The notes under the pieces are model-generated. The model saw nothing but the letters and a program-made list of their open reading frames with translations. It searched no databases and was not told where the DNA came from. Shown piece after piece: positions 11,475-30,035 of a DNA stretch of 64,000 nt. Both the position numbers and the translations under genes were made by a program. Location of the stretch: IMG/VR virus record IMGVR_UViG_3300029893_000001, positions 62,001-126,000 of that record; one strand, given 5' to 3'. Within the stretch, counting starts at the first letter, position 1. Each line of letters begins with the position of its first letter.

Positions 11475-11476
11475 GT

Positions 11477-11518: not shown

Positions 11519-12319
11519 TCACGCCAGAAAGTCCGTCGTGGTCGTGACCTTCATGCCCTTCGACTGGAGGTCGCGAACGAAGTCGTCGCCGTACTTCTCG
11601 AAGCTCGGCACGTTCGACGACGCATCCGTGAGCAGGTGGATCTTCTCGACGTACTTCGGGTCCGAGAAGTGAGTCGCGATGTCTCGAACCGTGTTCGCAA
11701 GACAGTGCGAGAGGGCCTCGCCTGCCACAAGAATCACGTCGGCGTTCTCCAGCGTCTGGATGAATCCAGCGTTGATCTGCGTGCTCGGGTCCTCCGGATC
11801 CGGCACCTCGGCCATGACCGCCGAGAAATGCTCGGTCCACGGATTCGAGCCCTTCGTCACGAAGTCGCACATCGCATAGCGATCTTCCCAGTCGTGAACC
11901 GCCGCCGCCAGCTCGGGGACCACATTGTGGCCCTCATCGCCGATGAGGCAGTGGTAGGGCCAAATCACATGCGGGTATCGCTTGCCGGCCTCCAGGTCAC
12001 GAAGATACTTCAGAGAGCGCTTGTAGGCACTCGGCTGGCTGGTGGTCCACGTTCCGGACTCGACATCCTTCGTGGTGATCATCGTGAAGGGTGCCGGGTG
12101 TGCCCCGGACGAATTCTTCCACCACATGGGATGGCTGATGTCCACCTTGCGATGGCTATCGAGCGTGATGTGAATGTCGTTGAGCTTGTCCTTCAGGCGG
12201 TGGACGAGCTTGGCGAGGCGCTTCACATCCTCTTCGGCGCCGGGGACGAAAAGGCTCCCGTTCGGATTGCAGAAATCATTCTGCGGGTCGATGATGACGA
12301 GATCAATCTTCAGCGGCAT
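11519..12319 (-). CDS. pncA: nicotinamidase / isochorismatase-family cysteine hydrolase
   Basis: IDPQNDF, LDSH, WPYHC, KG and AGEALSHC motifs. Confidence 0.8.
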   Translation of the reverse strand: MPLKIDLVIIDPQNDFCNPNGSLFVPGAEEDVKRLAKLVHRLKDKLNDIHITLDSHRKVDISHPMWWKNSSGAHPAPFTMITTKDVESGTWTTSQPSAYKRSLKYLRDLEAGKRYPHVIWPYHCLIGDEGHNVVPELAAAVHDWEDRYAMCDFVTKGSNPWTEHFSAVMAEVPDPEDPSTQINAGFIQTLENADVILVAGEALSHCLANTVRDIATHFSDPKYVEKIHLLTDASSNVPSFEKYGDDFVRDLQSKGMKVTTTTDFLA

Positions 12320-12333
12320 GTACAGACTCTCCT

Positions 12334-12873
12334 CTACTTCTTTTCTTGCTGACCAAGGGTCTTACCCAGGTCATCCATTTTCTTCTTGTACTCATCCATC
12401 GTGATGGTACCGACCTTCATGTCAGGAGCCAGCTCGCGGGCCAGATCGACTAGGAGCTTCCCTGTCCAGTGGAACGCAGAAATCATTCCCTTTTGGGACA
12501 GCATGTCCCATCCGATTTCGGAAGAAAGAGAAACCGCCTTGGTCAGCGTGTCCACATACTCCATGAGCATGTTGTTGACCATGAACAGCACCGCTGCTCT
12601 TTCTTCGCGGATAAACTTCGACAAGGCCTCTTCGCCTGCCTCGCCAAGAACTAGGTGCACGTTCTTCTCAAGGCGGTCCAGCTCGTTTTGTAGGAGCTTG
12701 TCCTTGAGTTCGACAGCCCTGTCGAAGACCTTTTCGGGGTCAGTACTCCCGTCCCTGGACAGGGTCCTCCAGATGTGCTTCTTGTTCTCATAAGATTCGA
12801 GATTGAATTCGCGAATCAAAGAGATCGTGCGGAGAACCGCTTCCTCAGGAGACAACAACTGCTTTTCACCCAT
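12334..12873 (-). CDS. hypothetical protein
   Basis: Helical ORF within gene run. Confidence 0.6.
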   Translation of the reverse strand: MGEKQLLSPEEAVLRTISLIREFNLESYENKKHIWRTLSRDGSTDPEKVFDRAVELKDKLLQNELDRLEKNVHLVLGEAGEEALSKFIREERAAVLFMVNNMLMEYVDTLTKAVSLSSEIGWDMLSQKGMISAFHWTGKLLVDLARELAPDMKVGTITMDEYKKKMDDLGKTLGQQEKK

Positions 12874-13213
12874 GGGCGCTCTTCTTTCTGTTCTTACGGC
12901 TTCGCGAACGCTTTCTATCGGGCTCCACATCGAGGTCCTCGACGTCGACACGTACTCGTGCTCTGGCTGCCTCGATGCGGTCCGATAACGTGTCCGCTAA
13001 CGCCGCGTCTGCAACCATGATGGACAAAACCTCATCGAGCTTTTCGATCTCGCGCAGACGCCGCTCGTGTTGTGTTTGGTTCAGCGAGGCTTTGTATCGT
13101 AATCGACGATCTCGAAACCATTCTCGAATTCCATCGCCAACCTTGGTTAAGAAAACGACGACACCGAAAGCGAGAAGAATACCTACGACAGGATTCTCCA
13201 GAAGTTGGTCCAC
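12866..13213 (-). CDS. membrane-anchored coiled-coil protein
   Basis: N-terminal hydrophobic helix, GGAG RBS. Confidence 0.6.
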   Translation of the reverse strand: MDQLLENPVVGILLAFGVVVFLTKVGDGIREWFRDRRLRYKASLNQTQHERRLREIEKLDEVLSIMVADAALADTLSDRIEAARARVRVDVEDLDVEPDRKRSRSRKNRKKSAHG

Positions 13214-13479
13214 CCTCGTCTCCTTTTCAACGCACGGTTGAACTAATTGGTTCTCTTCGGGGCAGCGTATTCTTCGTGAGTTTGGGACCGAGGAGCCACC
13301 GCAGAACGCTGATCCAGTAGAACCTGTCTGCCTCCAATTCCATGGCAGCTACGAGCACCGGAGAAACGGGCAGAACGCATACCATCGTGTAGCCAGTCGA
13401 GTCCGATAGAGTTATCGACTGTCCAGTGAGGGACTTGTGACTCCGAAGCGTCCTGCCGTCTTCGCTGGAAACGATCATA

Positions 13480-14259
13480 TTAGTTGTCGAAGAAGAAGCA
13501 AATCCGAACCTCATTCGGATCGCCTAGCTGCTGCAGAGCGGGCAGCGTCTCCGTCAGGAACGATTCAGCACACTCTGCGTAGGACTTTTCCCACGAAACA
13601 AGAGTGTACACGTTGGCGACCCTGTCATATGGATCGGATTTCGGAGGATTCGAAGAAATGTACTTCTCCATCTCTTCGTTGGAAACGTGTGAAATACCGG
13701 GGCCCATGATAGCACCGCACCACCCATCAGGAGACCCCTTCTCCTTGAACGTGATGTAGCTGGAAGGCCCGACCCATCCCTGAAGCCGCGTCGTCTGGTT
13801 CCAGTCGTAATCGAGAAGCTCCTGGACCGTGAACCACGAGTGGCTGTGTCCATCCGCCTCCCACCGATCTGCCTCCCAACGGTATCCGACAGAGGCGTCC
13901 TCCGGAATGCCCTTGGGATCTGCAATTGGATTGAATCCCTCGCCGGTTTTCACTCCAGCAAAGCCACGACCGTTCCGAACGTCAGCCAGGATCGCAAACA
14001 GGTTGTAGTTGCGACCTACGTACATCGCACTGCTTCGCTTCTGCTTGTAGATTTCGTCCCACTCTTCGTAGGAGTCTACCCACTTGCCAGGGAACGAGTT
14101 GTAAAGGGCTTGCCTTTTTGCTTGCTTCTCGGGGTCGTTCTTGTAGTACTCTACGATCTCTGCCGCTTCGTCTCGGATCTCAACGAGCGTCTCTGGGTAC
14201 ACCAATGTCCAGACGCCATCGATCTTCTTCTCAACGTAAAAATGGATGTCACATCCCAT
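13480..14259 (-). CDS. conserved phage protein (MGCDIH family)
   Basis: MGCDIH...RNYNLFAILADVRN...HSHSW...FFFDN. Confidence 0.75.
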   Translation of the reverse strand: MGCDIHFYVEKKIDGVWTLVYPETLVEIRDEAAEIVEYYKNDPEKQAKRQALYNSFPGKWVDSYEEWDEIYKQKRSSAMYVGRNYNLFAILADVRNGRGFAGVKTGEGFNPIADPKGIPEDASVGYRWEADRWEADGHSHSWFTVQELLDYDWNQTTRLQGWVGPSSYITFKEKGSPDGWCGAIMGPGISHVSNEEMEKYISSNPPKSDPYDRVANVYTLVSWEKSYAECAESFLTETLPALQQLGDPNEVRICFFFDN

Positions 14260-14501
14260 CGAACTTCTCCTGATTTCCTAGCTTCAGTTCCAGCGGCGGC
14301 GGTCTTCGCTTTCTGCGGCGCAGCCTATCGTACCGCTCAAATTGGGCGTTGACAGACGGTTCCCAGCCAACGGTGACTCTCCACCAGAGCCATAGGCAAA
14401 TGTCTTGGAGGCGCTCGTCGCTGACAGAATCCCCAGACCCACAGATTGCGCTGTGAATCTCCTCTGAGATAGCCAAGACCGCATACTTATGACGGTCGGC
14501 T

Positions 14502-14933
14502 TTATCGAAACGTATCTTCACGGCCGTGAAACCCAGTCCTCCATCCACGGGCCCTAGCCATCTCGAAATTCTCCTTCGAGATCTTGAGGGCTGCAGTGCT
14601 GATGTGAACGTCGCCCATTTCTCCGTGCTCACAGTACACGGAGAACGCACGACAGAATCGGAAATTCTTCATGTGAGGCTCGGCGTACCAGGATGCCGCC
14701 TCCTTCAACTCGTCCAGGTACTCCTGGCTGTGAGGCCCAGGAGACCCAGGCAGTGCGGGATCCAAAACCTCGCAGAAAATGGCCACGCTACCAGGACCAA
14801 TGCGAATGAAGAAATCCCCCGGAGCCAACTGGCTTTGCCAGTCTTTAACGGCGTGATCTGCTTCGATGCGGTCGTTTTCGATGGCAGCAAGCATCTCGTC
14901 GAGGCTTGCGAACGAATGAATGGAGTGGGTCAT
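14502..14933 (-). CDS. hypothetical protein
   Basis: GGGAGG RBS; downstream of motif copy 3. Confidence 0.65.
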   Translation of the reverse strand: MTHSIHSFASLDEMLAAIENDRIEADHAVKDWQSQLAPGDFFIRIGPGSVAIFCEVLDPALPGSPGPHSQEYLDELKEAASWYAEPHMKNFRFCRAFSVYCEHGEMGDVHISTAALKISKENFEMARARGWRTGFHGREDTFR

Positions 14934-14948
14934 GGCAGGCCTCCCATC

Positions 14949-14968
14949 TAATATCGGCAGGGTTCAAC
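14949..14968 (-). promoter_or_regulatory. conserved 20-bp motif, copy 3
   Basis: GTTGAACCCTGCCGATATTA. Confidence 0.65.
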
Positions 14969-16283
14969 CGGCCAACACTTTGAGTCGACGCTTTCTGTCA
15001 GGAATGCGCTTCGGCATCGACCGGTTGTGTTCAGCGAATTTGCAAAGAAGGAAGTGTGCGTCGTCAGGCACGTGGCACTGTGGACTGTAGTCACACTCGT
15101 AACACGCATCGAACCACGAGCTTCTCGCCCCAGCAAGCTTGTTCCAGATTCGCTGGAACTTAGTCCTGTAGATACTGACCTCGCGTGCGTCGTCAGTCTC
15201 CGGGTCGAACGAACTGTGGCTCACTCGTCCCTTATCGTCTACATAGCACGAAAATAGCCCCTCCTGCTGCCCCGCGAAGCGAGTGTCCACTTCGGGGAGC
15301 TGGTGGCTCAAGAAGTAGGGGAGCAGCCCTTCCGAGAAGGCAATTCGAAACCCGCTCGATTGCACTTGCGTAAGTGCCCGCGGTAGAGTTACCTCGTACA
15401 CGCCCTTCGAAGGGGTGCCTTCCCAACTCGCACGTCCCACAGAGGGGTAATACGCCAATAGCACCACGTTGAGATTTCGCAGCCCGACTTCTTGCAGGTC
15501 CAGCAAATTATCAGCAACATCGTTGTCAAAAATGACGTGGACATTGAGCTGAACCCGGCTATCAAGTCGAGAACGCCACGTATCGTACGTCTGCTTGAAG
15601 TATTCCGGCCCCTTGAACGCGTGGTACGTCAAGGCGACCCCACCACAATACTTGTTGGTGGCGTTAAACACCTCATCCCGAAGGATATGCCCAGCCGTTG
15701 TGTAGTTCGGAACGGTGCCCTGTGCTCGTGTGTACTCCAAGAACCACGGAAAATCGGGATGAGCGGTAGGCTCCCCACCCCCGAAGGCGATCTGATACGG
15801 CGCCTGATCGAGGCCGCTGAAGATTTCAGCGAGAAGCTCACGCGGTGCGTGGTCTCCCTTCACGGTAGAATCCATGTAGCAGTACGAACACCCGAAATTG
15901 CACCAGTCGGTGATCTTCACGTCGATGGTCTCAGGAACGGGCGAAAACGCCTTCTCTTCTCGCCAAGTCGGAACATAAGTCGATGACCTACGAACCTTCG
16001 TACCATCAGCCTTCGTGTAAGTGTAACGGCGAGTCGTTTCGAACTTGCGGCCCCACGCCTTTTTGATGGCTTGGAATTCCGCTGTACGGTGATATCGAGC
16101 CCCAGACTCAATACCCAGGTAAGCAGCAACCGACTCTACCAGCGTGCCCTTTTGGGTGTACCAAGAGCGGTCTTCATCCTCAGGAACCTCTACGCTGCGA
16201 ACGAGGACACCTGTCTCAGTATCGAACGTCGACTCGTAGAACGTGAACCCCCTGAACGAGTTCTTCATGTGACGGAGAGCCAT
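14964..16283 (-). CDS. radical SAM protein with SPASM/twitch-like C-terminus
   Basis: CNFGCSYC, GGGEP, C-terminal CYECDYSPQC. Confidence 0.9.
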   Translation of the reverse strand: MALRHMKNSFRGFTFYESTFDTETGVLVRSVEVPEDEDRSWYTQKGTLVESVAAYLGIESGARYHRTAEFQAIKKAWGRKFETTRRYTYTKADGTKVRRSSTYVPTWREEKAFSPVPETIDVKITDWCNFGCSYCYMDSTVKGDHAPRELLAEIFSGLDQAPYQIAFGGGEPTAHPDFPWFLEYTRAQGTVPNYTTAGHILRDEVFNATNKYCGGVALTYHAFKGPEYFKQTYDTWRSRLDSRVQLNVHVIFDNDVADNLLDLQEVGLRNLNVVLLAYYPSVGRASWEGTPSKGVYEVTLPRALTQVQSSGFRIAFSEGLLPYFLSHQLPEVDTRFAGQQEGLFSCYVDDKGRVSHSSFDPETDDAREVSIYRTKFQRIWNKLAGARSSWFDACYECDYSPQCHVPDDAHFLLCKFAEHNRSMPKRIPDRKRRLKVLAG

Positions 16284-16326
16284 GGATTTTCCTCGGCGAA
16301 CGTGTTATCTTGAAAGAGGAGCAGTA

Positions 16327-16545
16327 ATGCACGACCGCCCCAAAAAGAAAACGGTAGACCTCTGCTATCACAAGCAAGACGACGGTTCGCCCTGCGAAGA
16401 AAAGGTCATGTGGAAGCTGAAGAGCGAAGAAAACGGTCGCACGTTTAAAGTGTGCGACCGTCATCTCGCGTGGGGGATTCGGCTTTCTGGGTATCCAGCG
16501 TACGTGGATGTATTCAACGCAGAGGCCCCTGCCGAAACAGACTAA
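16327..16545 (+). CDS. small Cys/His protein
   Basis: GAGGAG RBS; C...C...CDRH; one of few plus-strand genes. Confidence 0.6.
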   Translation: MHDRPKKKTVDLCYHKQDDGSPCEEKVMWKLKSEENGRTFKVCDRHLAWGIRLSGYPAYVDVFNAEAPAETD

Positions 16546-17381: not shown

Positions 17382-17399
17382 AGCGACCTCCTTGCCCCT

Positions 17400-17419
17400 T
17401 ATTATCGGCAGGGTTCAGC
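17400..17419 (-). promoter_or_regulatory. conserved 20-bp motif, copy 4
   Basis: GCTGAACCCTGCCGATAATA. Confidence 0.7.
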
Positions 17420-17702
17420 CCCTATTGGATATGGGCGCGGGAACTGTACCTCCACACCCAACCAAGGACTCCACCCGCCTCGCGAATCAACGGCGATTTT
17501 GACTCACTCATGTGCTCGATGGCATCAGCGGGCTGCAGCACAGAAAATACCTCTGCGATGCAATCACGAAGCTCCAATGGAATGCTAGAGTCGTCCCTAG
17601 TTAACTCTATCCCATGTTTCGGGTAAGCAAACAGAAGTTGCGAAACTTGGATGAGTCGCGACCGAAGTTCGGCGCCTAGCGCGGTTTTGTCTCTTGTGGC
17701 TC

Positions 17703-18098
17703 TCATCTCTCAGAAAGTACCTGTGGTAGCCCACGTCGCTCAGAAATGCACTGCGCCTCAGGACACTCACAGTCTTGGCTTTCGCATCCACCAAAATGGG
17801 AGAAATCCGGGTCGCACGCCGCACAGAGCGCGGCACCTTCCCGAAGAAAGTCGAGTCCCTTTTTGGTGAGACGCACACTAGTCCAAGGAAAGTCGCCGCC
17901 AAGAGATTCGAGATACCCCTCCTTGAACAGGGCGTCCAACGTTTTCGCGATGGCAGGAGAAAACGTTGCCTCGAAAACCGAAAACCTCTTCGCCTTGTTC
18001 AAAACGGTGAGGATTACCTTTCGGTTTCCACGCTTGTTGCGTGGAATATCATCTAGCCCAGCCGAGAACGAGCACACGAATACAGTGTCACGTGCCAC
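17703..18098 (-). CDS. hypothetical protein (wHTH-like plus Cys cluster)
   Basis: L..EGYL...VRLTKKG pattern. Confidence 0.55.
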   Translation of the reverse strand: MARDTVFVCSFSAGLDDIPRNKRGNRKVILTVLNKAKRFSVFEATFSPAIAKTLDALFKEGYLESLGGDFPWTSVRLTKKGLDFLREGAALCAACDPDFSHFGGCESQDCECPEAQCISERRGLPQVLSER

Positions 18099-18690
18099 GG
18101 GAATTCCTAATCTGCGTGCTAGAGATGCCTGCTAGGTGAAGGGGCAGCTCCACTCCTGAGTCAAAGCAATTCTTCGGGCCTGATGCTAAGCGCATTCCAT
18201 TTCTAGGCCAGACACAAAAGCTGCAGCCCATTTTGCTAACTGCCGCCCTTCCGTTGATCTCAACAAGTCGAACGTAATTGTCGTAGCCAATGTGGAAGAT
18301 CACCTCTTCCGCATAAGAGCGAAGAACTTCGTACTTGTCCACAAAAAGCGGCTGAGCCGTTACGAGAACATCGGCATAGCCGGTAAACTGGCGAAGCCGC
18401 TTCATTAGCTCGTCTTTCGTGAGGTCAGCCTTCCCTACTCGACTTGTGGAGATTTCGAAATACTTCGCGGAAGTCGTGGCTGCAACGGCGTATCCTGCTG
18501 ATCCATAACGCTGGACCACCATGGCATCCTCATCGATCGATTCGAACATCCACCGGTGGCCGTCATGAAGGGGATCAAAAGACCCACACAGCACATGTAG
18601 CTCTCCCACCTTCATCTTTGGGCTGAACGGCTCCAGGCCACGTGCCCTGCCGAGGCCACGGAATACACCAACGTAGTTTGAGTCAAACAT
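18088..18690 (-). CDS. HxGH nucleotidyltransferase (NadD/NMNAT-like)
   Basis: GSFDPLHDGH, IGYDN, ISSTQIR. Confidence 0.8.
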   Translation of the reverse strand: MFDSNYVGVFRGLGRARGLEPFSPKMKVGELHVLCGSFDPLHDGHRWMFESIDEDAMVVQRYGSAGYAVAATTSAKYFEISTSRVGKADLTKDELMKRLRQFTGYADVLVTAQPLFVDKYEVLRSYAEEVIFHIGYDNYVRLVEINGRAAVSKMGCSFCVWPRNGMRLASGPKNCFDSGVELPLHLAGISSTQIRNSRGT

Positions 18691-18870
18691 CGAAATTACT
18701 CACAACGACATCTCGCCCGGAACGCTGCAGCTCCGGCACACGTGAACGGGTCAGTACCCACCGCACAATGTTGCTCTAATTCTTGGGCATGAGCACACCG
18801 TCTCGCACATTCTTCATCCGACGGCGGGCTGCCACAAGCGTCCAGCAAAAAGACGGCAGCTATCAGAAAC

Positions 18871-19428
18871 CTAAACACGGACCAAGAATCCACCGGTTTG
18901 CAGCTCGTCGACCAAGTCTGACGAAGTTCCTGTTGCCAGCGCAAGTGCACACTCACTGATCATCCGATCCTGAATGTAGCGCTTACGGGACACCTTATAC
19001 GTGTCGCTGTGGTCAGCCTCATCAAGCTTGTCTAGCTGGAGGTGATAAACGTCTACGGAAGAGGGGTGTCCAAACGCAATGAATGCATGATTGTCACCAC
19101 GGCGATACCTGGTAGTCGTGATCGCTCCAGTTACAGTGATAGGAAGCGCTTCCCTCAAATCATGCGAGTTGCACAAATGAAGAGCGACAACCATCTCTTG
19201 TGAGACCGAGCCGGCATTACCCAAAACGTCAGCCGCATTTGGGTGCAGTCTTTCGATAAGCGCTGCTACGCTTTCTCGTGAATACGGTACGTAGATGCTA
19301 TCGATAACCGCCGACGATCCAGGAATCCCCAAAATCCCAGTAGCGTAAGAACCTACGCCGGTCAGCAGAAGCCTAAGCTTCGGACCGGCGTAGTTCGATA
19401 CGAAGGAACAGATGTCAAATTTCGCCAT
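18871..19428 (-). CDS. CinA C-terminal / PncC-like protein
   Basis: TG.GS...IPGSS......VPYS...SVS.E...TG......RRG. Confidence 0.65.
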   Translation of the reverse strand: MAKFDICSFVSNYAGPKLRLLLTGVGSYATGILGIPGSSAVIDSIYVPYSRESVAALIERLHPNAADVLGNAGSVSQEMVVALHLCNSHDLREALPITVTGAITTTRYRRGDNHAFIAFGHPSSVDVYHLQLDKLDEADHSDTYKVSRKRYIQDRMISECALALATGTSSDLVDELQTGGFLVRV

Positions 19429-20077: not shown

Positions 20078-20596
20078 TCAAGAAGATTGGACCCACGTTG
20101 CTACGAATAGTTCGGGACACTCGGGGTGTACCTCTGTGCGCGCCAATCCCCATCCGTCTGTGAATCCCGGCCATAGAACGGTGCCATTAAGATCGTCCAG
20201 CTCGTCTGGGACATGCGTGATAAGACACTCTGAAGCATGCTTTAGGCCTTCACGATAGACCTGCTCACCACCCATGAGCCAAATGTCTTTTCCAGGAGCA
20301 AACTCAGCAGCACACCTAAGCGCGTCTTCCATGTCTCTTGCGATCATGGAGTTGGGATTGATGTTCTCCATCCCAATTTCAACGGGTGTTTTGGATGTGA
20401 TGACGATGTTCACCCGATTCGGTAGGGGTCGCATCTTAGGCAGAAGAGACTCCCAGGTCTTGCGTCCCATGATAACCGCATGGCCACTCGTCTGGTCCTT
20501 AAAGAACTTCAAGTCTCCCTTATAGAACCAGGGAATCTTATTGTCCTTCCCAATCACTCCCTGAGGATTGAATGCAACAATCATTTTGACAGTCAT
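20078..20596 (-). CDS. folA: dihydrofolate reductase
   Basis: IGKDNKIPW...D..FF, VIMGRKTWESL, PLPNR, GG. Confidence 0.95.
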   Translation of the reverse strand: MTVKMIVAFNPQGVIGKDNKIPWFYKGDLKFFKDQTSGHAVIMGRKTWESLLPKMRPLPNRVNIVITSKTPVEIGMENINPNSMIARDMEDALRCAAEFAPGKDIWLMGGEQVYREGLKHASECLITHVPDELDDLNGTVLWPGFTDGWGLARTEVHPECPELFVATWVQSS

Positions 20597-21841: not shown

Positions 21842-22450
21842 TTACAGAGCACAACAGGCGTCGACTACATCCCAAAGTTCGTACTCTTCCTGATTACAGG
21901 AAAAGGGGCACTGGTCCTCTTTGCCCGGCAAAGCGAGGATAGAAGCAAAGGGCTTGACTTTTGGTCCTCGCACTAAATGCGTAACACAAGGCTCATCGCC
22001 ACACACTTCTACCTGATGATATGTGTTTTCGTCCAGGTAGTAACTGGATCCTGCCGACACATCAAAAGTCGATACCTTCAACGCCATTACGTAACGTTTT
22101 TCGTCCGGAGCGGCCACGCCAGGTGTGCATGAGTCGTATCGCAGTACAGCAGGCAGAGCGCCTTCTCTAGAATCTGGTATAACGTTAGGAACAATCTTCC
22201 AAACATGCGTTCGCAGCGTTCCACGTAGGACATGGGAGGTAAAGTGATACCGATGATCGTGGGGATTTTCAGCGACCGCCTTTATCCCCCAAAGGCTTTT
22301 GGACCAAAAAGGATGGTAGAAGTGATACCGGGTGTCGTCATCCATCTTCATCTGAACGAAACCCAGGCCAAAGAAATGAATCTTTGTACAATGAGCCCTC
22401 AGGTAATCGACGTCGAGTAATGGCTCTTTGTACTCAGGAAGAAGAGTCAT
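21842..22450 (-). CDS. cupin-fold protein
   Basis: PHDHRY.F.S.VL.G ... YHQV. Confidence 0.6.
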   Translation of the reverse strand: MTLLPEYKEPLLDVDYLRAHCTKIHFFGLGFVQMKMDDDTRYHFYHPFWSKSLWGIKAVAENPHDHRYHFTSHVLRGTLRTHVWKIVPNVIPDSREGALPAVLRYDSCTPGVAAPDEKRYVMALKVSTFDVSAGSSYYLDENTYHQVEVCGDEPCVTHLVRGPKVKPFASILALPGKEDQCPFSCNQEEYELWDVVDACCAL

Positions 22451-23487
22451 ACGGCTACCTCTGCTTTGATTGCAGGATGACACTGATAACCATCGAATTC
22501 GAAATCCTCAGCACCGCGACACAACCTAAGGAAGTCATCGATGGACCAATTCCTAGGATCTGTAGCCTCTGTAAGAGCAGACTGGTGCTCTCCCGGAGAC
22601 CTGTACATGACACCTGCTGCGCTGGGATTCTCCAGGTTGTTACTATAGGGAACTCGGTATTCGAAAGTCTTGATGCGAAGAGTAGGAAGGTTAAAAGGCT
22701 TCCTGCTTAGCTGCTCTTCGACTTGCGTCCCATGGTTCGAATAGATATGCACCGAACCAAACGTGTGAATGAACGTCCCCGGAGTCATGCCTGCGAGCCC
22801 TGCCATGATGTGCGTCAGTGCGGCGTAACTCGCGATGTTAAAAGGCACTCCAAGGAACACATCAGCGGATCTCTGGTAGAGCTGACAGTCTAGGAAGTAC
22901 CGCTCTCCTATGACCAGCGGGTCCTTTCGGACACTGAATTGGAAGAGTGTATGACATGGAGGTAGAGCTACCATGTCTGCCTCGAAGGGGTTCCAACCCG
23001 TTACGATGATTCGACGGGAGAACGGGTTTGTACGTAAGGTATTGAGAGCCTCAGCGATTTGGTCAAAACCGTTTCTCTTGTATAGCTTCTCGTCGTTCTC
23101 GTAATCATCATTAGCATCAGCGCCAAAGTTCCGCCATTGATGACCGTATACCGGTCCCAGTTCTCCTTCTGGGTACCCAAAACGATTGCATTGTTCGGCA
23201 GTCGCCCACTCATCCCAGATGTGAACGTTCTTCTCTTGAAGAAACTTGACGTGGGTCTGGCCTCTAAGCATCCAAAGAAGCTCTTCCACCAATCCTCGGT
23301 GGAACATTTTCTTTGTTGTGAGTAGAGGGAATCCTTTGCGTAAGTCAATTCTAAGCTGATATCCAAACAGATCCCGAATGCCTGCCCCTGTTCGGTCTGG
23401 CTTATCGTTTCCGTACTGAAGAATGTTACGAAGGAGATCGAGGTACTGCTCTTCGGCGCCTTGATTGAAATTGATTGAAAAGGTCAT
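22447..23487 (-). CDS. thyA: thymidylate synthase
   Basis: DRTG, FPLLTTKK, LGPVYG.QWR, ALPPCH, YQRSADVFLGVPFNIASY. Confidence 0.97.
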   Translation of the reverse strand: MTFSINFNQGAEEQYLDLLRNILQYGNDKPDRTGAGIRDLFGYQLRIDLRKGFPLLTTKKMFHRGLVEELLWMLRGQTHVKFLQEKNVHIWDEWATAEQCNRFGYPEGELGPVYGHQWRNFGADANDDYENDEKLYKRNGFDQIAEALNTLRTNPFSRRIIVTGWNPFEADMVALPPCHTLFQFSVRKDPLVIGERYFLDCQLYQRSADVFLGVPFNIASYAALTHIMAGLAGMTPGTFIHTFGSVHIYSNHGTQVEEQLSRKPFNLPTLRIKTFEYRVPYSNNLENPSAAGVMYRSPGEHQSALTEATDPRNWSIDDFLRLCRGAEDFEFDGYQCHPAIKAEVAV

Positions 23488-24116: not shown

Positions 24117-24635
24117 TCATGCGTGCCCGTTTTTCTTCATCTCAAGAATACGCTCCTGATACCTACGCAACTCGAAGTACGCCTCGACTGTCAGGAGGTC
24201 TTTCATGTCTTCATAGTCCGTCGAAGACTGAATTTGCTCCTTAATGAGCGTACTACTAACCGCAGAAAGCGCTGGGTCAGAAGGCAAGAGCACAGTCTGA
24301 ACATGAGGGCATAGCTTCATGTTTTCTAGTGCCAATTCTAGCTCTGTCTTCGCGTCGGTTTCGTTTCGTACTCCGCGAATAAGCGCAGAAGCTCCAATTC
24401 TGTCTGCGTATTTCACGACATACCCGGTCGTCGCGTCAACAGACACATGAGGCATATTATCGATGTAGCTTTGAATCAGCTTTACCCGCTCTCTAGAAGA
24501 GAACATGGGCTTCTTGTCTGGATTATCCGCCACAAGGATTCGAACGTGAGAGAAGAGACGACAGCCTTGAAGAACTACGCTGAAGTGTCCCCGAGTAAAG
24601 GGATCGAACGTGCCAGGATACACCGCCACCGTCAT
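24117..24635 (-). CDS. coaD: phosphopantetheine adenylyltransferase
   Basis: VYPGTFDPFTRGH, NPDKKPMFS, IRGVR, VSST. Confidence 0.9.
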   Translation of the reverse strand: MTVAVYPGTFDPFTRGHFSVVLQGCRLFSHVRILVADNPDKKPMFSSRERVKLIQSYIDNMPHVSVDATTGYVVKYADRIGASALIRGVRNETDAKTELELALENMKLCPHVQTVLLPSDPALSAVSSTLIKEQIQSSTDYEDMKDLLTVEAYFELRRYQERILEMKKNGHA

Positions 24636-25123: not shown

Positions 25124-25410
25124 TGCTACGATTCCGTCGTCTTCATTGTGTCGTTGAGGTGCTGATAATGGTCAGCTACCGAGGTCGGAATGCACCTTCG
25201 AATCGAACCCTCCTCTTTAGTTGGACAAATTCAAAGCAACCATCCTTGGACGGGATTCCGTCGGGACGGAGCGCTAACGGCTGGTCACTTTCGTACCCGC
25301 ACTCCGATTTAGGGTCGGCGCGTTGTGCACACCATTCCATTGCCTCGAACGTGCAAGTGGCTGTACAGTGGTCGCAAACCCACTGCTCATACCCTTCAGG
25401 AATCACGGCC

Positions 25411-25950
25411 TCAATACCCTGTCACCTTTGCTTCGTCGATTTTCGGGGAACGCTTGGAGCGTCCAGGCTCCTCAGAAATGAGGTTCGCAAGCATCACCAT
25501 ATCCGGCCGATCCTTCTCCCGGATGTTCGGAATGAGACACTTCATAGCAAGCACGTGACGTAGACTCTGAACTTTGTAGCCATCAAATTCGTCCGCCTCG
25601 CCAACGAGGTCTTCCCACGTCAAGCTCCACACGCGAGGAACCGAATAGAATACGTCGATTCCATCGATGCTCACAGACAACCTGTTGCCTTCTCGTGGAA
25701 ACTTACTGCTCAGTTTGGAGGCCAAGGATGGGCTGACCACAATGTCAAGGTCACGAACATCACGAATGCCGCGGAAAGCTAGTGCTGCCGACCCAGAAAG
25801 AACAAAGTGTTCACGCTCCCAATCCCTGGGAATGCGGTCCAATAATTCGTCGAGGCACGGAGTAGCTGCCTTCTTCTTACGTCGGCTGTACCACATAAAA
25901 GAAAGAGCAAACACTGTCAGTGCAAGTCCAATGTAGAGTCCTGAAAGCAT
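25411..25950 (-). CDS. nucleotidyltransferase-fold protein with N-terminal TM
   Basis: GSAALAFRGIRDVRDLD and C-terminal REKD. Confidence 0.6.
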   Translation of the reverse strand: MLSGLYIGLALTVFALSFMWYSRRKKKAATPCLDELLDRIPRDWEREHFVLSGSAALAFRGIRDVRDLDIVVSPSLASKLSSKFPREGNRLSVSIDGIDVFYSVPRVWSLTWEDLVGEADEFDGYKVQSLRHVLAMKCLIPNIREKDRPDMVMLANLISEEPGRSKRSPKIDEAKVTGY

Positions 25951-26171
25951 CGCCTATACCCTCCAAAGCAAACGCCCCTACCCATCCAGAGTAGGGGCGG
26001 AAAGTGCTTTACAGGACTAGGGCTCAGCGGCGGCGAACAGGTATGTAAGGCCGAGACTTCTGCAAGTCCGCATCAGCCTTTAGCAGTGCTTGCCTGAACG
26101 CCTCCGGCGACGGACCCGTCGATCGCGCAAAGCTCTCGGGGTCCATGCTCACAAACAACTCCTTGGGGTCA

Positions 26172-26549
26172 TTACTCGTCAATAGTACCTCCCAACGGGT
26201 TCAGCCACGGCACATCGCTAAGACGGCGAAGGAAGCGAAAAAGACCGTCAAAACGACTGCCAATGTTGTTGATGGGGTCATCCTTCTGTGGATTATTCGG
26301 GATGTAAAGCGCCTGAGCTAAATCCTCCACGTGTTCGTGTAGCGTCATCCCCAGGGGCTCGTCTACGAGCCGCATGTTCGGACAACGCTTCCGAACTTTG
26401 TTTGCAAGTTGTCTAGCTTTCCTCGCCAACCGGATGCGTTGTCTGCGATGTTGTTCGAATTCACTGTAGACCTCCTTTGCTTCTCGAAGTAGATTGTCAA
26501 TCTCGCGTAGCCGTCGGACACGCGAGGGCTTGAGAAGGAGCGCATCCAT
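26172..26549 (-). CDS. hypothetical protein
   Basis: ORF downstream of TGTTATCTT element. Confidence 0.55.
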   Translation of the reverse strand: MDALLLKPSRVRRLREIDNLLREAKEVYSEFEQHRRQRIRLARKARQLANKVRKRCPNMRLVDEPLGMTLHEHVEDLAQALYIPNNPQKDDPINNIGSRFDGLFRFLRRLSDVPWLNPLGGTIDE

Positions 26550-26581
26550 GTCTAAAAGATAACATGGATTAGCGGAGGAGA

Positions 26582-27079
26582 TCAAACAGCCGGAAGAAAA
26601 TGCCAGTACGGTGAGCTTTCGCGGTCAGCGCATAGGTATCGCAGCTCGATCGCCGAAAGATTCTGCAACTTGTAATCCAGCATCGCCTCCGGCAGACGCG
26701 TCAACAACGAAGGTGCGAATCTGTAGACTCTGGCCACAGGGCTGCACCCACAACTCGCCCACATGTATTCAACATTCAGCCCTGCTTCGAGCAGTGCTCG
26801 GTCAATCTGCCAATACCTAGATAGCCGTCGTTCATGAACAAGAACATACCGATATCTAGCCTCTCGCACGTCTCTAACGTGAGGCTCTTGCGGTAATCCA
26901 CGTGCCTCGGCCTCTTCTCTTGCTACATGAAGAGCGCGCCGAAGCGGAACCTTGTGAACGTGATGATGATCTCGTGCCAGTTTAAGAGCGCAGCGAACTG
27001 AGCACGGGCCATCGCCGTCGGTATAGATTGAACTGAAACCACACACAGGACAAGCCGGGACCGACGCCTGAGGTTTCAT
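26582..27079 (-). CDS. hypothetical zinc-finger protein
   Basis: CPVC...CSVRC. Confidence 0.55.
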   Translation of the reverse strand: MKPQASVPACPVCGFSSIYTDGDGPCSVRCALKLARDHHHVHKVPLRRALHVAREEAEARGLPQEPHVRDVREARYRYVLVHERRLSRYWQIDRALLEAGLNVEYMWASCGCSPVARVYRFAPSLLTRLPEAMLDYKLQNLSAIELRYLCADRESSPYWHFLPAV

Positions 27080-27163
27080 GGGGAATAGCCTTCCCCGAAG
27101 GTAGCACTAGCTAGGCTCATCACCACTACTCTAACCTAGATAAGGAGCGCCACAAGGAAATGT

Positions 27164-27613
27164 TCAGTCAGAGCTTCCGGCGATGAATCGAATGTGCATA
27201 GGCTTGACGTTGCACCGATAAGAACCATCATCGTGTTCAACGTCGTAAAGCCAAGCGTTCTCAGTAACGCCCATACAAGCAATGCCGTTGGCGTAGTTAT
27301 CCAGCATTTCGCGAGTGACTCGTCTCTTGTCTCTCACACGACCAAGAGCCTTCCTCCCGTTGCCGTCATCGCATTCGACCAGATCATTAATTTCGATGTC
27401 GGTAGGGTCGGTGGAACGCCCAGAGTGAGCTATGATATCACGGCAGAGGCGCAATGTGTCAAGCACATACTGTCTCCCCTCTGCTGTATTCTCTTCGATG
27501 AGACGAACCATATCTCCGGCCGTATATGTTCGTTCGACCGTTGTCCAAACTCGCCTATTAGCAGGAAGTTCTCGCAGCAAACCAATTACAACTTCATGAA
27601 CAGAAGAAAACAT
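27164..27613 (-). CDS. hypothetical protein
   Basis: GGAG RBS, 149 aa. Confidence 0.55.
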   Translation of the reverse strand: MFSSVHEVVIGLLRELPANRRVWTTVERTYTAGDMVRLIEENTAEGRQYVLDTLRLCRDIIAHSGRSTDPTDIEINDLVECDDGNGRKALGRVRDKRRVTREMLDNYANGIACMGVTENAWLYDVEHDDGSYRCNVKPMHIRFIAGSSD

Positions 27614-27625
27614 CTAAGTCTCCAA

Positions 27626-27710
27626 TAGGGGCGGAGGGAGTCGAACCCTCATGAGCCTTGCGGCTCTTTGGATTTTAAGTCCATAGCGTCTGCCATTCCG
27701 CCACGCCCCC
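27626..27710 (-). tRNA. tRNA-Leu(TAA)
   Basis: Class II cloverleaf, loop CTTAAAA. Confidence 0.92.
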
Positions 27711-27741
27711 TTTTAGGGTGGAGTAAGTATATCTCCTATCC

Positions 27742-28128
27742 TCAATCTACGCCAGGCAGCGTAATTGCGAATCGCGCTACGGCTGCATCGATGATTTCGA
27801 AGAACTTGGCAGTGCCCTCGTGTGGCAGGTATTCGTCTGCTTCATCGTCGTATGCAACCCAAGCGAAGAACATGCCTTTCAGGAGCTTGGCCTGCTTCGC
27901 TGCTGCCTCTAAGGAGTAGAGCCACGGTGAAGCAAGCTCACCCGCCACACCATTCTCACCATCGTCGTCCAAGTAGTCGATCGTCAGAACGATACGAAAC
28001 CAAACGTCGCCTTTGAAAAGCTCAGACGTCTTCACCTCTGCGGAGGGAACACGCGTCTCCACATGTGCTTCGAACATCCAGGGGCCCAGTTGAGCCTTCG
28101 GCCCTTCGACCTGCATTTCCGTGCTCAT
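27742..28128 (-). CDS. hypothetical protein
   Basis: 128 aa, ATGA overlap. Confidence 0.6.
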   Translation of the reverse strand: MSTEMQVEGPKAQLGPWMFEAHVETRVPSAEVKTSELFKGDVWFRIVLTIDYLDDDGENGVAGELASPWLYSLEAAAKQAKLLKGMFFAWVAYDDEADEYLPHEGTAKFFEIIDAAVARFAITLPGVD

Positions 28129-28511
28129 TCTTCCTCACCTTCGTCCTCAAATCGAATAGAGGCCCCGCCAAGCATAGCACCTCCCCAAGGAACCAGAGAA
28201 CCGAACCGAGTCTCCACGTCCTCAGGATTGATATTTTCACCCTCCGTGGGGTTCTGCTTTTTGGGCGGTCTCTTACGTGGCTTTGTTTTCATGGTGGCTA
28301 AAGCAGCATTGGCTTTCTTGGCCCAGTCAGTGTTCGCTGTCATCTTCTTCCTCTTCGTCGGGGCTATATGGGGAACACGTCTTGTCAGGATTATGGGCCC
28401 ACCCACATACTGGGCACTTTTCCCAACTGAAGGGCATCATATCCTCGTCGCTGAAATCGATATCCATTAGGACCTCCATTACTCCGGAGATCCTTTACAG
28501 CGACGAGGAAA

Positions 28512-30035
28512 TCAGACGTTCGGCTTGCCCAACGCTTGACGGACAGCCGCCTTACTCAACTCAGCCGTCTCGCGCTTAATGCGGTCCATGGTTTCGGAAG
28601 ACGTGTTCGTCGTGAGAAGAACAACGTCGTCGCGGTAGGGTAGGTCCTTCTCTCGAAGGCCAGCCCGAAGGCTGTCCGCCGCACGTTCTACCTCAGATTT
28701 GTCCCAAAAGCAGCCTTCGTTCTGAGACATTCGAAGCGAAGTAAGCGCTCTCGCTTTCCGCACGTAGTCGACTCCAACCGGAACCAAACCTTCGTCTGCT
28801 TGAAGGACCCTCTCTGCCCTCTCGTCCAGTATCCCCGTGTTATGATCTGAGTTGGACGATGGAGGAGTCCAGGGGCCGCCGTGCAGGACAAGAAGATTCC
28901 CGATGGGAGGATCAGAGTTCTTCAACCACATTTTGCGGCCTGGGAGAGAAGACTTTGCTCCAGACATCTTCATGACCGGACAACCGTCGACTTCCACGAG
29001 CTTGTATACAAATCCCATGCTGAAATCAGGGGACGCAAGCCGACTTCCAATACCAATTCCGTCGACTAGCGGTAGCACCCCAGCAATCCGCAGCTCCCTG
29101 ATCAACGGTTCCGCAAAGTCGCCAGAGACAATGATCTTCGTCTCAGTAAACCCCATCATGTCGAGCAGTCGACGCACCGCAGGGAGGGTCTCTGTCCAAA
29201 CCCCAGAATCCAAGCGAACTGCCTTCAGAGGAATTTGAGTCTCAAACGAGGCACGCATAGCGTTAGCGACACCGGCCATGATGTCGAACGTGTCGACGAG
29301 AAGAACATGCGTTTCAGGGTAAGTTCGAATGAACTCCTTGAAAGCACGCAGCTCGCCCTGCATTCCGTAAGACAGAACGTACGCATGCGCCATCGTTCCA
29401 CTGACCGGCACGTGATAGACACGTCCTGCCTCTAGATTCGAGGTAGCATCAAAGCCCCCAATCACAGCCGCCACTGCGGTGTGTACGGCCGCCGCCTCAT
29501 CCTGACGGCGAGTAGAAAAATCGATCAGCTTCATCTCGCCAGCCACATTTCGAATTTTTCGAGCCAGCGTAGCCGCTCGTACCGAAGAATTCAGAATGCT
29601 CAGGATTGGAGTCTCCAGCATGTGAACTGCACCGATAGGACCCGTGACTTGGACGGTCGGGAAATCCCAGTAAAGAATTTCGCCGTCCCGGACATACGAG
29701 ACCTCAAGACTTGCCAATTCTTGAGGAAAGGTCTCACGCAGATAGGTCTCGAACGGTTCAAACTCATCATCAGAGACCCTCAGAACGTGGTTCTGAATAT
29801 AAGCCATATCGTCATACGAGAACGGGTCCCTGAACTCTGATGAGTTCAGCATCTCATTGAGACGGTAGGCTCCAGCCATGATGACAGTATCGATGTCTTC
29901 AGTACCCCCGGGATAGCGAGTATGTGGGTACCTACGGAAGAAAGCCTCCGCAGTTGCCAGAGTCGAGGCACGTCCATTCTTCCAATGCGCGTAAAGCATC
30001 GAAAGTTGGTAGGCGTCGTTGTGGAAAATGTTCAT
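28512..30035 (-). CDS. pncB: nicotinate phosphoribosyltransferase
   Basis: DAYQLSM, DFSTRR, TSN, GTMAH, LVDTFD, RLDSG, VYKLVE. Confidence 0.92.
   Translation of the reverse strand: MNIFHNDAYQLSMLYAHWKNGRASTLATAEAFFRRYPHTRYPGGTEDIDTVIMAGAYRLNEMLNSSEFRDPFSYDDMAYIQNHVLRVSDDEFEPFETYLRETFPQELASLEVSYVRDGEILYWDFPTVQVTGPIGAVHMLETPILSILNSSVRAATLARKIRNVAGEMKLIDFSTRRQDEAAAVHTAVAAVIGGFDATSNLEAGRVYHVPVSGTMAHAYVLSYGMQGELRAFKEFIRTYPETHVLLVDTFDIMAGVANAMRASFETQIPLKAVRLDSGVWTETLPAVRRLLDMMGFTETKIIVSGDFAEPLIRELRIAGVLPLVDGIGIGSRLASPDFSMGFVYKLVEVDGCPVMKMSGAKSSLPGRKMWLKNSDPPIGNLLVLHGGPWTPPSSNSDHNTGILDERAERVLQADEGLVPVGVDYVRKARALTSLRMSQNEGCFWDKSEVERAADSLRAGLREKDLPYRDDVVLLTTNTSSETMDRIKRETAELSKAAVRQALGKPNV

What the first reader, a model, noticed from the sequence alone, without database searches (positions are those of the whole stretch)
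11519..30035. Phage-encoded deamidating NAD+ salvage route (PncA, PncB, PncC-like, NadD-like)
Seen: nicotinamidase (11519), HxGH adenylyltransferase (18088), a nearby CinA/PncC-like gene (18871) and NAPRT (28512). Established: PncA then PncB, or PncC, yields NaMN, and NadD yields NaAD. Described phage NAD-reconstitution pathways (NARP1, NARP2) use amidated routes instead. Inference: a distinct counter-measure to NAD-depleting defences (SIR2/TIR). NadE is not in this window.
Basis: partly seen in the sequence, partly recalled or inferred. Interest (0 to 1): 0.6.

Follow-up and report, generated by a model that had tools for sequence, protein, structure and literature searches.

The report
Huge phage encodes nicotinamide-to-NAD salvage

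Summary
The four genes are real, all on the minus strand at the stated coordinates. The PncA-like protein keeps the nicotinamidase catalytic and metal-binding residues. The NAPRT scores 262 bits against the nicotinate-PRT model. The 200-aa protein has the NadD/NMNAT fold and both signature motifs. NadE, missing from the window, lies 143 kb further along the same 392-kb phage genome, so nicotinamide -> NA -> NaMN -> NaAD -> NAD+ is fully encoded. Related phage contigs keep the set, and in one of them NadE sits next to NAPRT.

Two corrections follow. First, the "PncC-like" protein has the CinA fold, but the PncC Ser/Lys dyad is not conserved: no Lys in any of 163 relatives, and the Ser site is variable. 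The protein is always followed by, or fused to, the NadD-like enzyme, in phages, bacteria and protists. It is best read as an uncharacterised partner of that enzyme, not a proven NMN deamidase. Second, the route is not new for phages. "NAD-jumbo phages" with pncB-nadD-nadE were described in silico in 2024.

A counter-defence role is plausible but untested. Verdict: new member of a known kind, with one uncharacterised module worth biochemical study.

The parts
11519..12319 (-). PncA-like nicotinamidase (266 aa), isochorismatase-like fold family, with a ~45-residue insertion between the DxH motif and the WPxHC motif
   Evidence: Pfam Isochorismatase 26.3 bits (cut-off 27) and NCBIfam PncA NF008623 31 bits. 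The best solved relative is yeast nicotinamidase Pnc1, 2h0r, E 8e-5. D11, D54, H56, W120-P121-x-H123-C124, K156 and C206 are invariant in an alignment with E. coli PncA and two phage homologues. The nearest ESM Atlas clusters are named 'Nicotinamidase family protein' and are mostly viral. Identity to relatives is 86-88%, against 54-65% for the other three genes.
18088..18690 (-). NadD/NMNAT-type nucleotidyltransferase (200 aa) with GSFDPLHDGH and ISSTQIR motifs and a ~25-residue beta-hairpin insertion; its preference for NaMN or NMN is unknown
   Evidence: The motifs are read directly from the sequence. A profile of 13 homologues hits S. aureus NadD 2h29, E 5.6e-5, over both N- and C-terminal parts. 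For the AlphaFold model (pLDDT 82), 34 of the 40 listed fold hits are NaMN/NMN adenylyltransferases, including the first 29, and PPAT appears only from rank 36. In every related locus the gene lies directly downstream of, or is fused to, the CinA-like gene.
18871..19428 (-). CinA-fold protein (185 aa) lacking the PncC Ser/Lys dyad; obligate partner of the NadD-like enzyme
   Evidence: For the model (pLDDT 91), all 21 solved-structure hits at E <= 0.001 are CinA/PncC, e.g. 2a9s at TM 0.6. Three alignment methods place the PncC Lys at V54. Two of them place the Ser at T23 and the third places it at L22. Among 163 relatives the Lys site is never Lys, and the Ser site is T 79, A 38, V 11, S 10. 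G37, S39, Y49, T100 and R150, the PncC binding positions, are kept. R107, R109, K134 and D154 are family-specific near-invariants. All eight long relatives tested are CinA-like + CTP_transf_like fusions.
28512..30035 (-). Nicotinate phosphoribosyltransferase (NAPRT, TIGR01513 type); the ORF is open up to a TTG at 30083; the C-terminal ~130 residues match no family
   Evidence: TIGR01513 262 bits, E 1e-77 (equivalog cut-off 297). The NAMPT-type model NF006629 scores only 22 bits. Pfam NAPRTase_N (41.9) and NAPRTase (23.1) are above their cut-offs. It is the only PF04095 gene in the genome. Relatives are 47-54% identical, with the alignment starting at residue 17.

Best explanation
The window belongs to a 392-kb huge phage from subsurface metagenomes. 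The phage encodes the whole deamidated (Preiss-Handler) salvage of nicotinamide:
- PncA-like nicotinamidase: Nam -> nicotinate.
- NAPRT: nicotinate + PRPP -> NaMN.
- A NadD/NMNAT-type adenylyltransferase, acting with a CinA-fold partner: NaMN -> NaAD.
- An ammonia-type NadE, encoded 143 kb beyond the window's end: NaAD -> NAD+.

Expressed during infection, the set would raise or rebuild the NAD+ pool from nicotinamide, independently of the host's own salvage.

Shown here: gene presence, family and fold, conservation of catalytic residues in PncA and of signature motifs in NadD and NadE (a GTMAH stretch in the NAPRT was seen only by eye), completeness of the pathway, and recurrence in related phages. 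Inferred: the enzyme activities, the NaMN preference of the adenylyltransferase, the physiological purpose, and what the CinA-fold partner does. My best guess for the partner is a mononucleotide-binding or -processing subunit, and not a canonical Ser/Lys NMN deamidase.
For: - Genome: a virus record of 392,328 bp, with CheckV completeness 100.
- PncA: catalytic triad and metal ligands conserved.
- NAPRT: E 1e-77, and clearly of the NAPRT type, not the NAMPT type.
- NadD-like: fold and motifs.
- NadE: PF02540 127 bits and TIGR00552 131.6 bits (cut-off 63.65), with an SGGIDS PP-loop.
- Relatives L001-L003 keep NAPRT, the CinA-like gene, the NadD-like gene and PncA in the same order.
- The more distant L013 has NadE directly beside NAPRT, together with the same further genes.
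- Three published huge-phage genomes that carry the PncA-like gene all carry NadE, and two also carry a strong PF04095 gene.
- Fusion of the CinA-like and nucleotidyltransferase domains in 8 of 8 long relatives, and in phage LR745208, ties genes 2 and 3 together.
- Published precedent for Preiss-Handler sets in jumbo phages: PMC11662467.
Against: - Three of the four window proteins fall below curated HMM cut-offs, so their functions rest on motifs and predicted folds.
- The genes are spread over 18.5 kb among about 25 unrelated genes, and NadE is far away, so this is a gene set and not a cassette.
- No PRPP synthetase is encoded.
- The substrate preference of the adenylyltransferase cannot be read from the sequence. 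In one distant phage (L011) the same two-gene module sits next to a NAMPT-type PRT, which fits NMN use equally well.
- No RNA data show expression.
- No activity was measured.
Confidence: 0.7

Rival explanations
1. The set is specifically a counter-defence, a 'NARP-like' deamidated pathway. On this reading it was selected because it rebuilds NAD+ from the nicotinamide released by Sir2, TIR, SEFIR or DSR NADases, and so rescues the phage from abortive infection.
For: - The entry enzyme uses nicotinamide, the very product of defence NADases.
- The PncA-like gene is much better conserved than its pathway partners: 86-88% against 54-65%.
- Three other phage NAD+-rebuilding routes have been shown to act this way.
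- The genome also encodes an ADP-ribosylglycohydrolase.
Against: - There is no test of any kind here.
- The route costs three ATP-consuming steps plus PRPP, and does not reuse ADPR.
- The genes sit among general nucleotide and cofactor genes (ThyA, DHFR, CoaD). That fits broad metabolic self-sufficiency of huge phages, which is how PMC11662467 reads such sets.
- The host and its defence systems are unknown.
Confidence: 0.35
2. The CinA-like protein is, after all, an NMN deamidase that uses other catalytic residues (for example K134, with T23 or water). NMN would then be funnelled through NaMN into the same NadD-NadE trunk.
For: - CinA fold.
- The PncC substrate-binding positions are kept: G37, S39, Y49, T100, R150 (residue roles from PMC5384747).
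- A near-invariant Lys (K134, 151 of 163) exists elsewhere in the chain.
- Fusion to a NaMN/NMN adenylyltransferase makes pathway sense.
Against: - The Lys general base (AtCinA K63 / Ec K61) aligns to a hydrophobic or small residue in all 163 relatives.
- The Ser site is Ala or Val in 30% of them.
- K63A and S31A abolish activity in AtCinA (PMC5384747). E. coli CinA paralogues without these blocks are inactive (PMC3855486).
- The phage uses an ATP-dependent ligase, not an NAD-dependent one, so it has no NMN source of its own.
Confidence: 0.22
3. The NadD-like/CinA-like pair is an NMN-using (amidated) unit, independent of the PncA-NAPRT-NadE genes. The phage would then have two partial routes and not one linear pathway.
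For: - In the distant phage contig L011 the pair lies 1 kb from a NAMPT-type PRT (NF006629, 160 bits) and not a NAPRT.
- Fold hits include the dual-specificity human NMNATs.
- In L010 the fused form lies beside an ADP-ribosylglycohydrolase.
Against: - This genome has no NAMPT, PnuC or NadR-type source of NMN.
- In the closer relatives the pair always travels with NAPRT, PncA and, where the contig reaches it, NadE.
Confidence: 0.25
4. The genes are bacterial DNA mis-binned or mis-assembled into a viral record, or chance look-alikes with unrelated functions.
For: Three of the proteins score below curated family cut-offs.
Against: - The contig is a single sequence with uniform composition and strand bias, and 28 co-oriented tRNA genes.
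- The same genes occur in the same order in several independent phage-like contigs from other samples.
- The window's DNA recurs in at least one further study.
- Conserved catalytic residues and confident folds argue against chance.
Confidence: 0.03

Closest known systems
'NAD-jumbo phages' with a Preiss-Handler gene set (pncB-nadD-nadE, e.g. phage Kuafu_71; Microbiome 2024, PMC11662467)
   Same: - Genome above 200 kb.
- It encodes NAPRT, a NadD-type adenylyltransferase and NadE, so NAD+ can be made from nicotinate without host enzymes.
- In both cases the evidence is in silico only.
   Different: - This phage comes from subsurface or rock metagenomes, not animal guts.
- It adds a nicotinamidase in front, so nicotinamide is the entry substrate.
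- Its genes are dispersed, with NadE 143 kb away, and not in a tight cluster.
- Its adenylyltransferase belongs to a divergent family that is paired with a CinA-fold protein.
NARP2 (NAMPT + NMNAT; vibriophage KVP40 type) and NARP1/NARP3 phage NAD+ reconstitution pathways (bioRxiv 10.1101/2024.02.11.579819; PMC13464706)
   Same: Phage-encoded enzymes that rebuild NAD+; nicotinamide is a starting material for NARP1 and NARP2; an NMNAT-fold adenylyltransferase takes part in NARP2 and NARP3.
   Different: - Those routes keep the amide, passing through NMN, ADPR-PP or NR, and need two genes.
- This route deamidates first, needs NadE to put the amide back, and uses four to five genes.
- Adps/Prs-like, NAMPT-type and PnuC genes are absent here.
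- Counter-defence has been shown for the NARPs, not for this set.
Bacterial pyridine nucleotide cycle: PncA-PncB-NadD-NadE with PncC (E. coli, Salmonella)
   Same: The same chemistry and the same enzyme families for four steps. The catalytic residues of PncA and the signature motifs of NadD and NadE are conserved.
   Different: - The NAPRT is of the TIGR01513 type, not the enterobacterial TIGR01514 PncB type (29 bits).
- The CinA-fold protein lacks the PncC Ser/Lys dyad.
- All the proteins are highly diverged from cellular enzymes.
Uncharacterised CinA-like + cytidylyltransferase-like fusion proteins (~350-400 aa) of bacteria, protists and viruses, auto-annotated 'PncC' or 'NadD'
   Same: The phage's genes 18871-19428 and 18088-18690 are the split form of this fusion, with the same conserved residues in both halves.
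   Different: The phage form is two genes, separated here by 180 nt. No member of the fused family was found to be characterised in the literature searches.

Membership tests
Nicotinamidase (PncA/Pnc1; isochorismatase-like hydrolases) | Catalytic triad Asp-Lys-Cys | tested here: met
   D11, K156 and C206 align with the corresponding residues of yeast Pnc1 and E. coli PncA, and are invariant in the phage homologues. The residue roles are taken from my own knowledge of the Pnc1/PncA structures.
Nicotinamidase (PncA/Pnc1; isochorismatase-like hydrolases) | Metal-binding Asp-His-His (DxH motif plus WPxHC motif), which separates nicotinamidases from other isochorismatase-like enzymes | tested here: met
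   D54, H56 and H123 (within W120-P-Y-H-C124) are conserved against E. coli PncA and Pnc1.
Nicotinamidase (PncA/Pnc1; isochorismatase-like hydrolases) | Score above curated family cut-offs | tested here: not met
   Pfam PF00857 26.3 bits against 27; NCBIfam NF008623 31 bits against 174. The protein is a divergent, largely viral subfamily.
Nicotinate phosphoribosyltransferase (NAPRT, TIGR01513 type) | Full-length match to NAPRT models that is better than the match to NAMPT-type models | tested here: met
   TIGR01513 262 bits, E 1e-77, over residues 21-389. The NAMPT-type model NF006629 scores 22 bits. Both Pfam NAPRTase domains are above their cut-offs. The score is still below the equivalog cut-off of 297.
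Nicotinate phosphoribosyltransferase (NAPRT, TIGR01513 type) | Preference for nicotinate over nicotinamide | not testable with these tools
   This needs an enzyme assay. A GTMAH stretch containing the conserved His is visible in the sequence, but it was recognised only by eye and from memory.
NadD / NMNAT nucleotidyltransferases | (H/T)xGH and ISSTxxR ATP-binding motifs on a Rossmann-like fold | tested here: met
   GSFDPLHDGH (residues 36-45) and ISSTQIR (189-195). H42, H45, S191, T192 and R195 are invariant in 13 homologues. 34 of the 40 listed fold hits are NadD or NMNAT.
NadD / NMNAT nucleotidyltransferases | Score above curated cut-offs, and NaMN specificity | tested here: inconclusive
   PF01467 19.4 bits against 21; the NadD equivalogs score about 21 bits against more than 112. 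Specificity cannot be read from the sequence. Gene context points to NaMN in this lineage but to NMN in L011.
PncC NMN deamidase (CinA domain, PF02464) | CinA-domain fold | tested here: met
   All 21 solved-structure matches at E <= 0.001 are CinA/PncC, with TM 0.52-0.61.
PncC NMN deamidase (CinA domain, PF02464) | Ser/Lys catalytic dyad (AtCinA S31/K63; Ec S29/K61), essential for activity | tested here: not met
   K61 aligns to V54 by HMM, MAFFT and hhalign, and the site is never Lys in 163 relatives. S29 aligns to T23 by MAFFT and hhalign (to L22 by HMM); that site is T 79, A 38, V 11, S 10. Its essentiality comes from PMC5384747.
PncC NMN deamidase (CinA domain, PF02464) | Substrate-binding residues (AtCinA G46, S48, Y58, T105, R145) | tested here: met
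   G37, S39, Y49, T100 and R150 are conserved at 76-98% in the family.
NAD+ synthetase NadE (outside the window) | PF02540/TIGR00552 above cut-off, with the PP-loop SGGxDS | tested here: met
   127.5 bits (cut-off 21) and 131.6 bits (cut-off 63.65). The motif is GLSGGIDS. There is no CN-hydrolase domain, so it is the ammonia type.
NARP1 / NARP2 / NARP3 | Adps (Prs-like) + Namat; NAMPT + NMNAT; PnuC + NadR | tested here: not met
   There is no PF13793 match, only one PF04095 gene and that of the NAPRT type, and no PnuC match in the 392-kb genome. No NUDIX domain either.
NAD-jumbo phage, Preiss-Handler class (PMC11662467) | Phage genome above 200 kb that encodes pncB, nadD and nadE | tested here: met
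   392,328 bp; NAPRT, a NadD-like enzyme and NadE are all present.

The most novel reading that the evidence does not exclude
The CinA-fold protein and the divergent NadD-like enzyme form a previously unrecognised two-part NAD-pathway enzyme. It is split in this phage and fused in over a thousand bacterial, protist and viral proteins. Its CinA-like half has swapped the PncC Ser/Lys amidase site for an Arg/Lys-rich site (R107, R109, K134, R150). On this reading it does something other than NMN deamidation, for example capturing or handing over a phosphorylated pyridine or ADP-ribose-derived substrate, or hydrolysing a different bond. That would allow the module to plug into either NAPRT- or NAMPT-based phage routes.
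Probability: 0.25. Interest if true: 0.65.

Novelty: new member of a known kind. Interest (0 to 1): 0.4.

Why it matters
NAD+ depletion is a common way for bacteria to abort phage infection, and every phage rebuilding route proven so far keeps the amide group. A phage-borne route that starts with nicotinamidase and ends with NadE would show that the classical bacterial Preiss-Handler cycle can also be carried by a virus. It also offers a concrete five-gene set to test against Thoeris, DSR and Sir2-HerA systems. Separately, the work singles out a widespread, automatically mis-annotated 'PncC/NadD' fusion family whose CinA-like half lacks the known catalytic residues. Working out what that half does would correct many annotations and could reveal a new step in NAD metabolism.

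Tried and rejected
- A DNA search of 20 kb against 50,697 phage records found nothing.
- Single-protein scans of IMG/VR for the CinA-like and NadD-like proteins found no confirmed relatives.
- A tblastn of the CinA-like protein against deposited phages found nothing. Only the profile found the fused form in LR745208.
- The phmmer search of the CinA-like protein against PDB sequences was empty. The profile reached 2a9s only at E 0.01.
- Complex prediction for the NadD-like and CinA-like proteins gave 'no answer' (score 0.00). It is not evidence either way.
- The idea that the CinA-like protein recycles NMN from a phage NAD-dependent ligase is rejected: there is no LigA, and an ATP-dependent ligase is present.
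- The idea that the second CTP_transf_like gene (24117-24635) is an NMNAT is rejected: it is CoaD/PPAT, above the equivalog cut-off.
- Membership of NARP1, NARP2 and NARP3 is rejected.
- Promoter and terminator scans of the region showed no more sites than shuffled sequence.
- No RNA run holds the sequence.
- One literature search did not confirm the yeast Pnc1 residue numbers, so those numbers rest on my own knowledge.

Full report
**What the window is.** The window is bases 62,001-126,000 of a single 392,328-bp virus record. CheckV estimates it as complete, and no end repeats were found. Base composition is even, at 50-57% G+C with a steady negative GC skew. Nearly all genes, and all 28 tRNA genes, lie on the minus strand. 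The DNA is held by subsurface-metagenome runs from two studies, which may be its source. An independent rock-metagenome run holds 88% of the sampled words. No RNA run holds it. It has no near relative among 50,697 deposited phage genomes at the DNA level.

1. 11519-12319, 266 aa. The HMM evidence is thin: Pfam Isochorismatase scores 26.3 bits against a cut-off of 27, and the NCBIfam PncA model scores 31 bits. The best solved relative, however, is yeast nicotinamidase Pnc1. Aligned with Pnc1 and E. coli PncA, the protein keeps the Asp-Lys-Cys triad (D11, K156, C206). It also keeps the Asp-His-His metal site (D54, H56, and H123 within WPYHC). The residue roles come from my own knowledge of those structures. 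The nearest ESM Atlas clusters are named nicotinamidase families and are mostly viral. I accept it as a nicotinamidase.

2. 28512-30035, with the ORF open up to a TTG at 30083. It scores 262 bits, E 1e-77, against the TIGR01513 NAPRT model. The NAMPT-type model scores only 22 bits, and both Pfam NAPRTase domains are above their cut-offs. It is the only gene of this superfamily in the genome.

3. 18088-18690, 200 aa. HMMs see only the N-terminal GSFDPLHDGH motif. The C-terminal ISSTQIR motif is also there. A 13-sequence profile reaches S. aureus NadD at E 5.6e-5 over both halves. For the AlphaFold model (pLDDT 82), 34 of the 40 listed fold hits are NaMN/NMN adenylyltransferases, including the first 29, and PPAT appears only from rank 36. 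It is a NadD/NMNAT-type enzyme. Whether it prefers NaMN or NMN cannot be read from the sequence.

4. 18871-19428, 185 aa. The sequence evidence for CinA is sub-threshold. The model is confident (pLDDT 91), and all 21 solved-structure matches at E <= 0.001 are CinA/PncC proteins. The fold claim holds.

**NadE.** It is present in the genome at G000:C1:268832-269806, minus strand, 324 aa. It scores 127.5 bits on PF02540 and 131.6 bits on TIGR00552 (cut-off 63.65). It has an SGGIDS PP-loop and no glutaminase domain. The phage therefore encodes every step from nicotinamide to NAD+ by the deamidated route.

**Other NAD-related genes in the genome.** I found no NAD-dependent ligase, NUDIX, Prs-like, second PRT or PnuC gene. 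That excludes NARP1, NARP2 and NARP3. An ADP-ribosylglycohydrolase is encoded far away at G000:C1:329076-329780.

**Is the set a unit?** The four window genes are spread over 18.5 kb. Among them lie thymidylate synthase, DHFR, a bona fide CoaD and a radical-SAM protein, plus many unknowns. This is not a compact cassette.

The set does recur, however:
- Contigs from other samples (L001-L003) keep NAPRT, ThyA, the CinA-like gene, the NadD-like gene, the radical-SAM gene and the PncA-like gene in the same order.
- A more distant 81-kb contig (L013; its NadD-like and CinA-like proteins are 42-43% identical to the window's) has NadE directly beside NAPRT, followed by the same genes.
- Three published huge-phage genomes that carry the PncA-like gene (LR745208, LR756511, LR756500) all have NadE. 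Two of them have strong PF04095 genes.
- NAPRT homologues are otherwise rare in deposited phages, at 24 of 50,697 records. Bacillus phage G is one, and several of the others are short, doubtful fragments.
- The PncA-like protein is far better conserved than its partners: 86-88% against 54-65% identity in L001-L003.

**The CinA-like protein is not a canonical PncC.** Mutagenesis of A. tumefaciens CinA showed that S31 and K63 are essential, supporting a Ser/Lys dyad (PMC5384747). E. coli CinA paralogues that lack the conserved blocks are inactive on NMN (PMC3855486).

Three alignment methods (HMM against 2a9s, MAFFT with E. coli PncC, and hhalign) all place the catalytic Lys opposite V54 of the phage protein. 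MAFFT and hhalign place the Ser opposite T23, and the HMM places it opposite L22.

An exhaustive profile search found 885 cluster representatives of this family. In an alignment of 163 of them:
- the Lys site is V, L, T or S and never Lys;
- the Ser site is Thr 79, Ala 38, Val 11, Ser 10;
- the PncC binding positions are kept (G37, S39, Y49, T100, R150);
- a new set of near-invariant residues appears (R107, R109, G111, K134, D154).

NMN deamidation by the known mechanism is therefore not supported. An alternative catalytic arrangement cannot be excluded without coordinates or an assay.

**The CinA-like and NadD-like genes form one module.** All eight long relatives (359-480 aa) that I tested are N-terminal CinA-like plus C-terminal cytidylyltransferase-like fusions. 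They include a Planctomycetaceae MAG protein and a protein of the amoeba Willaertia magna. A search with the C-terminal half of one fusion found 1,607 proteins, mostly 350-400 aa, some on megabase contigs. Sources auto-annotate them as 'PncC', 'CinA family' or 'NadD'. Atlas and BFVD neighbours include diatom, haptophyte, giant-virus and caudoviral proteins of the same architecture.

In every locus I fetched, the CinA-like gene is followed by, or fused to, the NadD-like gene. In one distant phage contig the pair lies 1 kb from a NAMPT-type PRT and not a NAPRT. In another, the fused form lies beside an ADP-ribosylglycohydrolase.

The module thus seems to be the 'mononucleotide to dinucleotide' unit that phages combine with either kind of PRT. 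A complex prediction for the two phage proteins gave no answer, which counts for nothing either way. I found no paper that characterises this fusion.

**Comparison with what is known.** NARP1 and NARP2 contain no mention of nicotinamidase, NadD or NadE, and the 2026 NARP3 is PnuC plus NadR. The deamidated route in phages is not new as an observation, though. A 2024 survey of 668 jumbo phages named 174 'NAD-jumbo phages'. Some of these carry the Preiss-Handler set, with pncB, nadD and nadE clustered in phage Kuafu_71, and the survey also mentions phage pncA (PMC11662467). That work was computational. I found no paper showing that such a set counters NAD+ depletion.

**Mechanism and purpose.** The most likely mechanism is the linear pathway Nam -> NA -> NaMN -> NaAD -> NAD+, run by phage enzymes. 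The host supplies PRPP and ATP, and ammonia is presumably the amide donor because the NadE has no glutaminase domain. Two purposes are compatible with the sequence: general independence from the host's cofactor supply, which suits the neighbouring ThyA, DHFR and CoaD genes, and recovery from defence NADases, which suits nicotinamide as the entry substrate and the strong conservation of the nicotinamidase. I put about 0.7 on the pathway itself and about 0.35 on counter-defence as its main selected role.

**Limits.**
- No activity, expression or host is known.
- Three proteins rest on motifs and predicted folds.
- Residue roles for Pnc1/PncA and for the NAPRT histidine come from memory.
- Read laying was not used, because no RNA run was found.
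- Nothing resembling human sequence was met, and no step needed referral.

Noticed in passing
window 27626-63974 (minus strand); suppressor at 43653-43726: There are 28 tRNA genes, all co-oriented with the protein genes. One has anticodon CTA, which reads TAG (ARAGORN calls it tRNA-Pyl). The NAD genes studied read through cleanly under table 11, so I did not invoke another genetic code.
   Followed up: no
window 24117-24635 (-): A phage-encoded phosphopantetheine adenylyltransferase (CoaD): TIGR01510 135 bits against an equivalog cut-off of 103. A homologue occupies the same place in relative L013.
   Followed up: partly
window 20078-20596 (-) and 22447-23487 (-): Dihydrofolate reductase (120 bits) and thymidylate synthase (336 bits) lie between the NAD genes. 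The block is therefore a general nucleotide and cofactor region.
   Followed up: no
window 14964-16283 (-): A radical-SAM protein of 439 aa is conserved between the NadD-like and PncA-like genes in all relatives (L001-L003, L013). Its function is unknown.
   Followed up: no
window 33509-35185 (-): A Ro60/TROVE-like protein with a vWA domain lies within the tRNA-rich region. It may point to RNA quality control or a Y-RNA-like partner.
   Followed up: no
window 30435-31016 (-): An HD_4 (RelA/SpoT-type hydrolase-like) domain protein lies upstream of the NAPRT gene, about 350 nt away, with a small 88-aa ORF (30217-30483) lying between them. An HD_4 protein also occurs in the distant contig L011.
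   Followed up: no
window 18691-18870 (-), between the CinA-like and NadD-like genes: There is a 180-nt spacer here, where relatives have 1 nt. It can be read as a small Cys-rich ORF of about 60 aa with a hydrophobic N-terminus followed by Cys, which looks lipoprotein-like. It starts at a GTG that overlaps the CinA-like stop codon.
   Followed up: partly
window 11231-12352 (+): A 373-aa ORF lies antisense to the PncA-like gene. It is probably spurious, because homology supports the minus-strand frame.
   Followed up: no
G000:C1:329076-329780 (-) and 142235-142591 (-), outside the window: An ADP-ribosylglycohydrolase (97 bits) and a sub-threshold Macro-like ORF (20.9 bits) elsewhere in the genome suggest that the phage also handles ADP-ribosylation.
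   Followed up: no
window 37553-38671 (-): An ATP-dependent DNA ligase. The genome has no NAD-dependent ligase, so phage replication itself does not generate NMN.
   Followed up: yes
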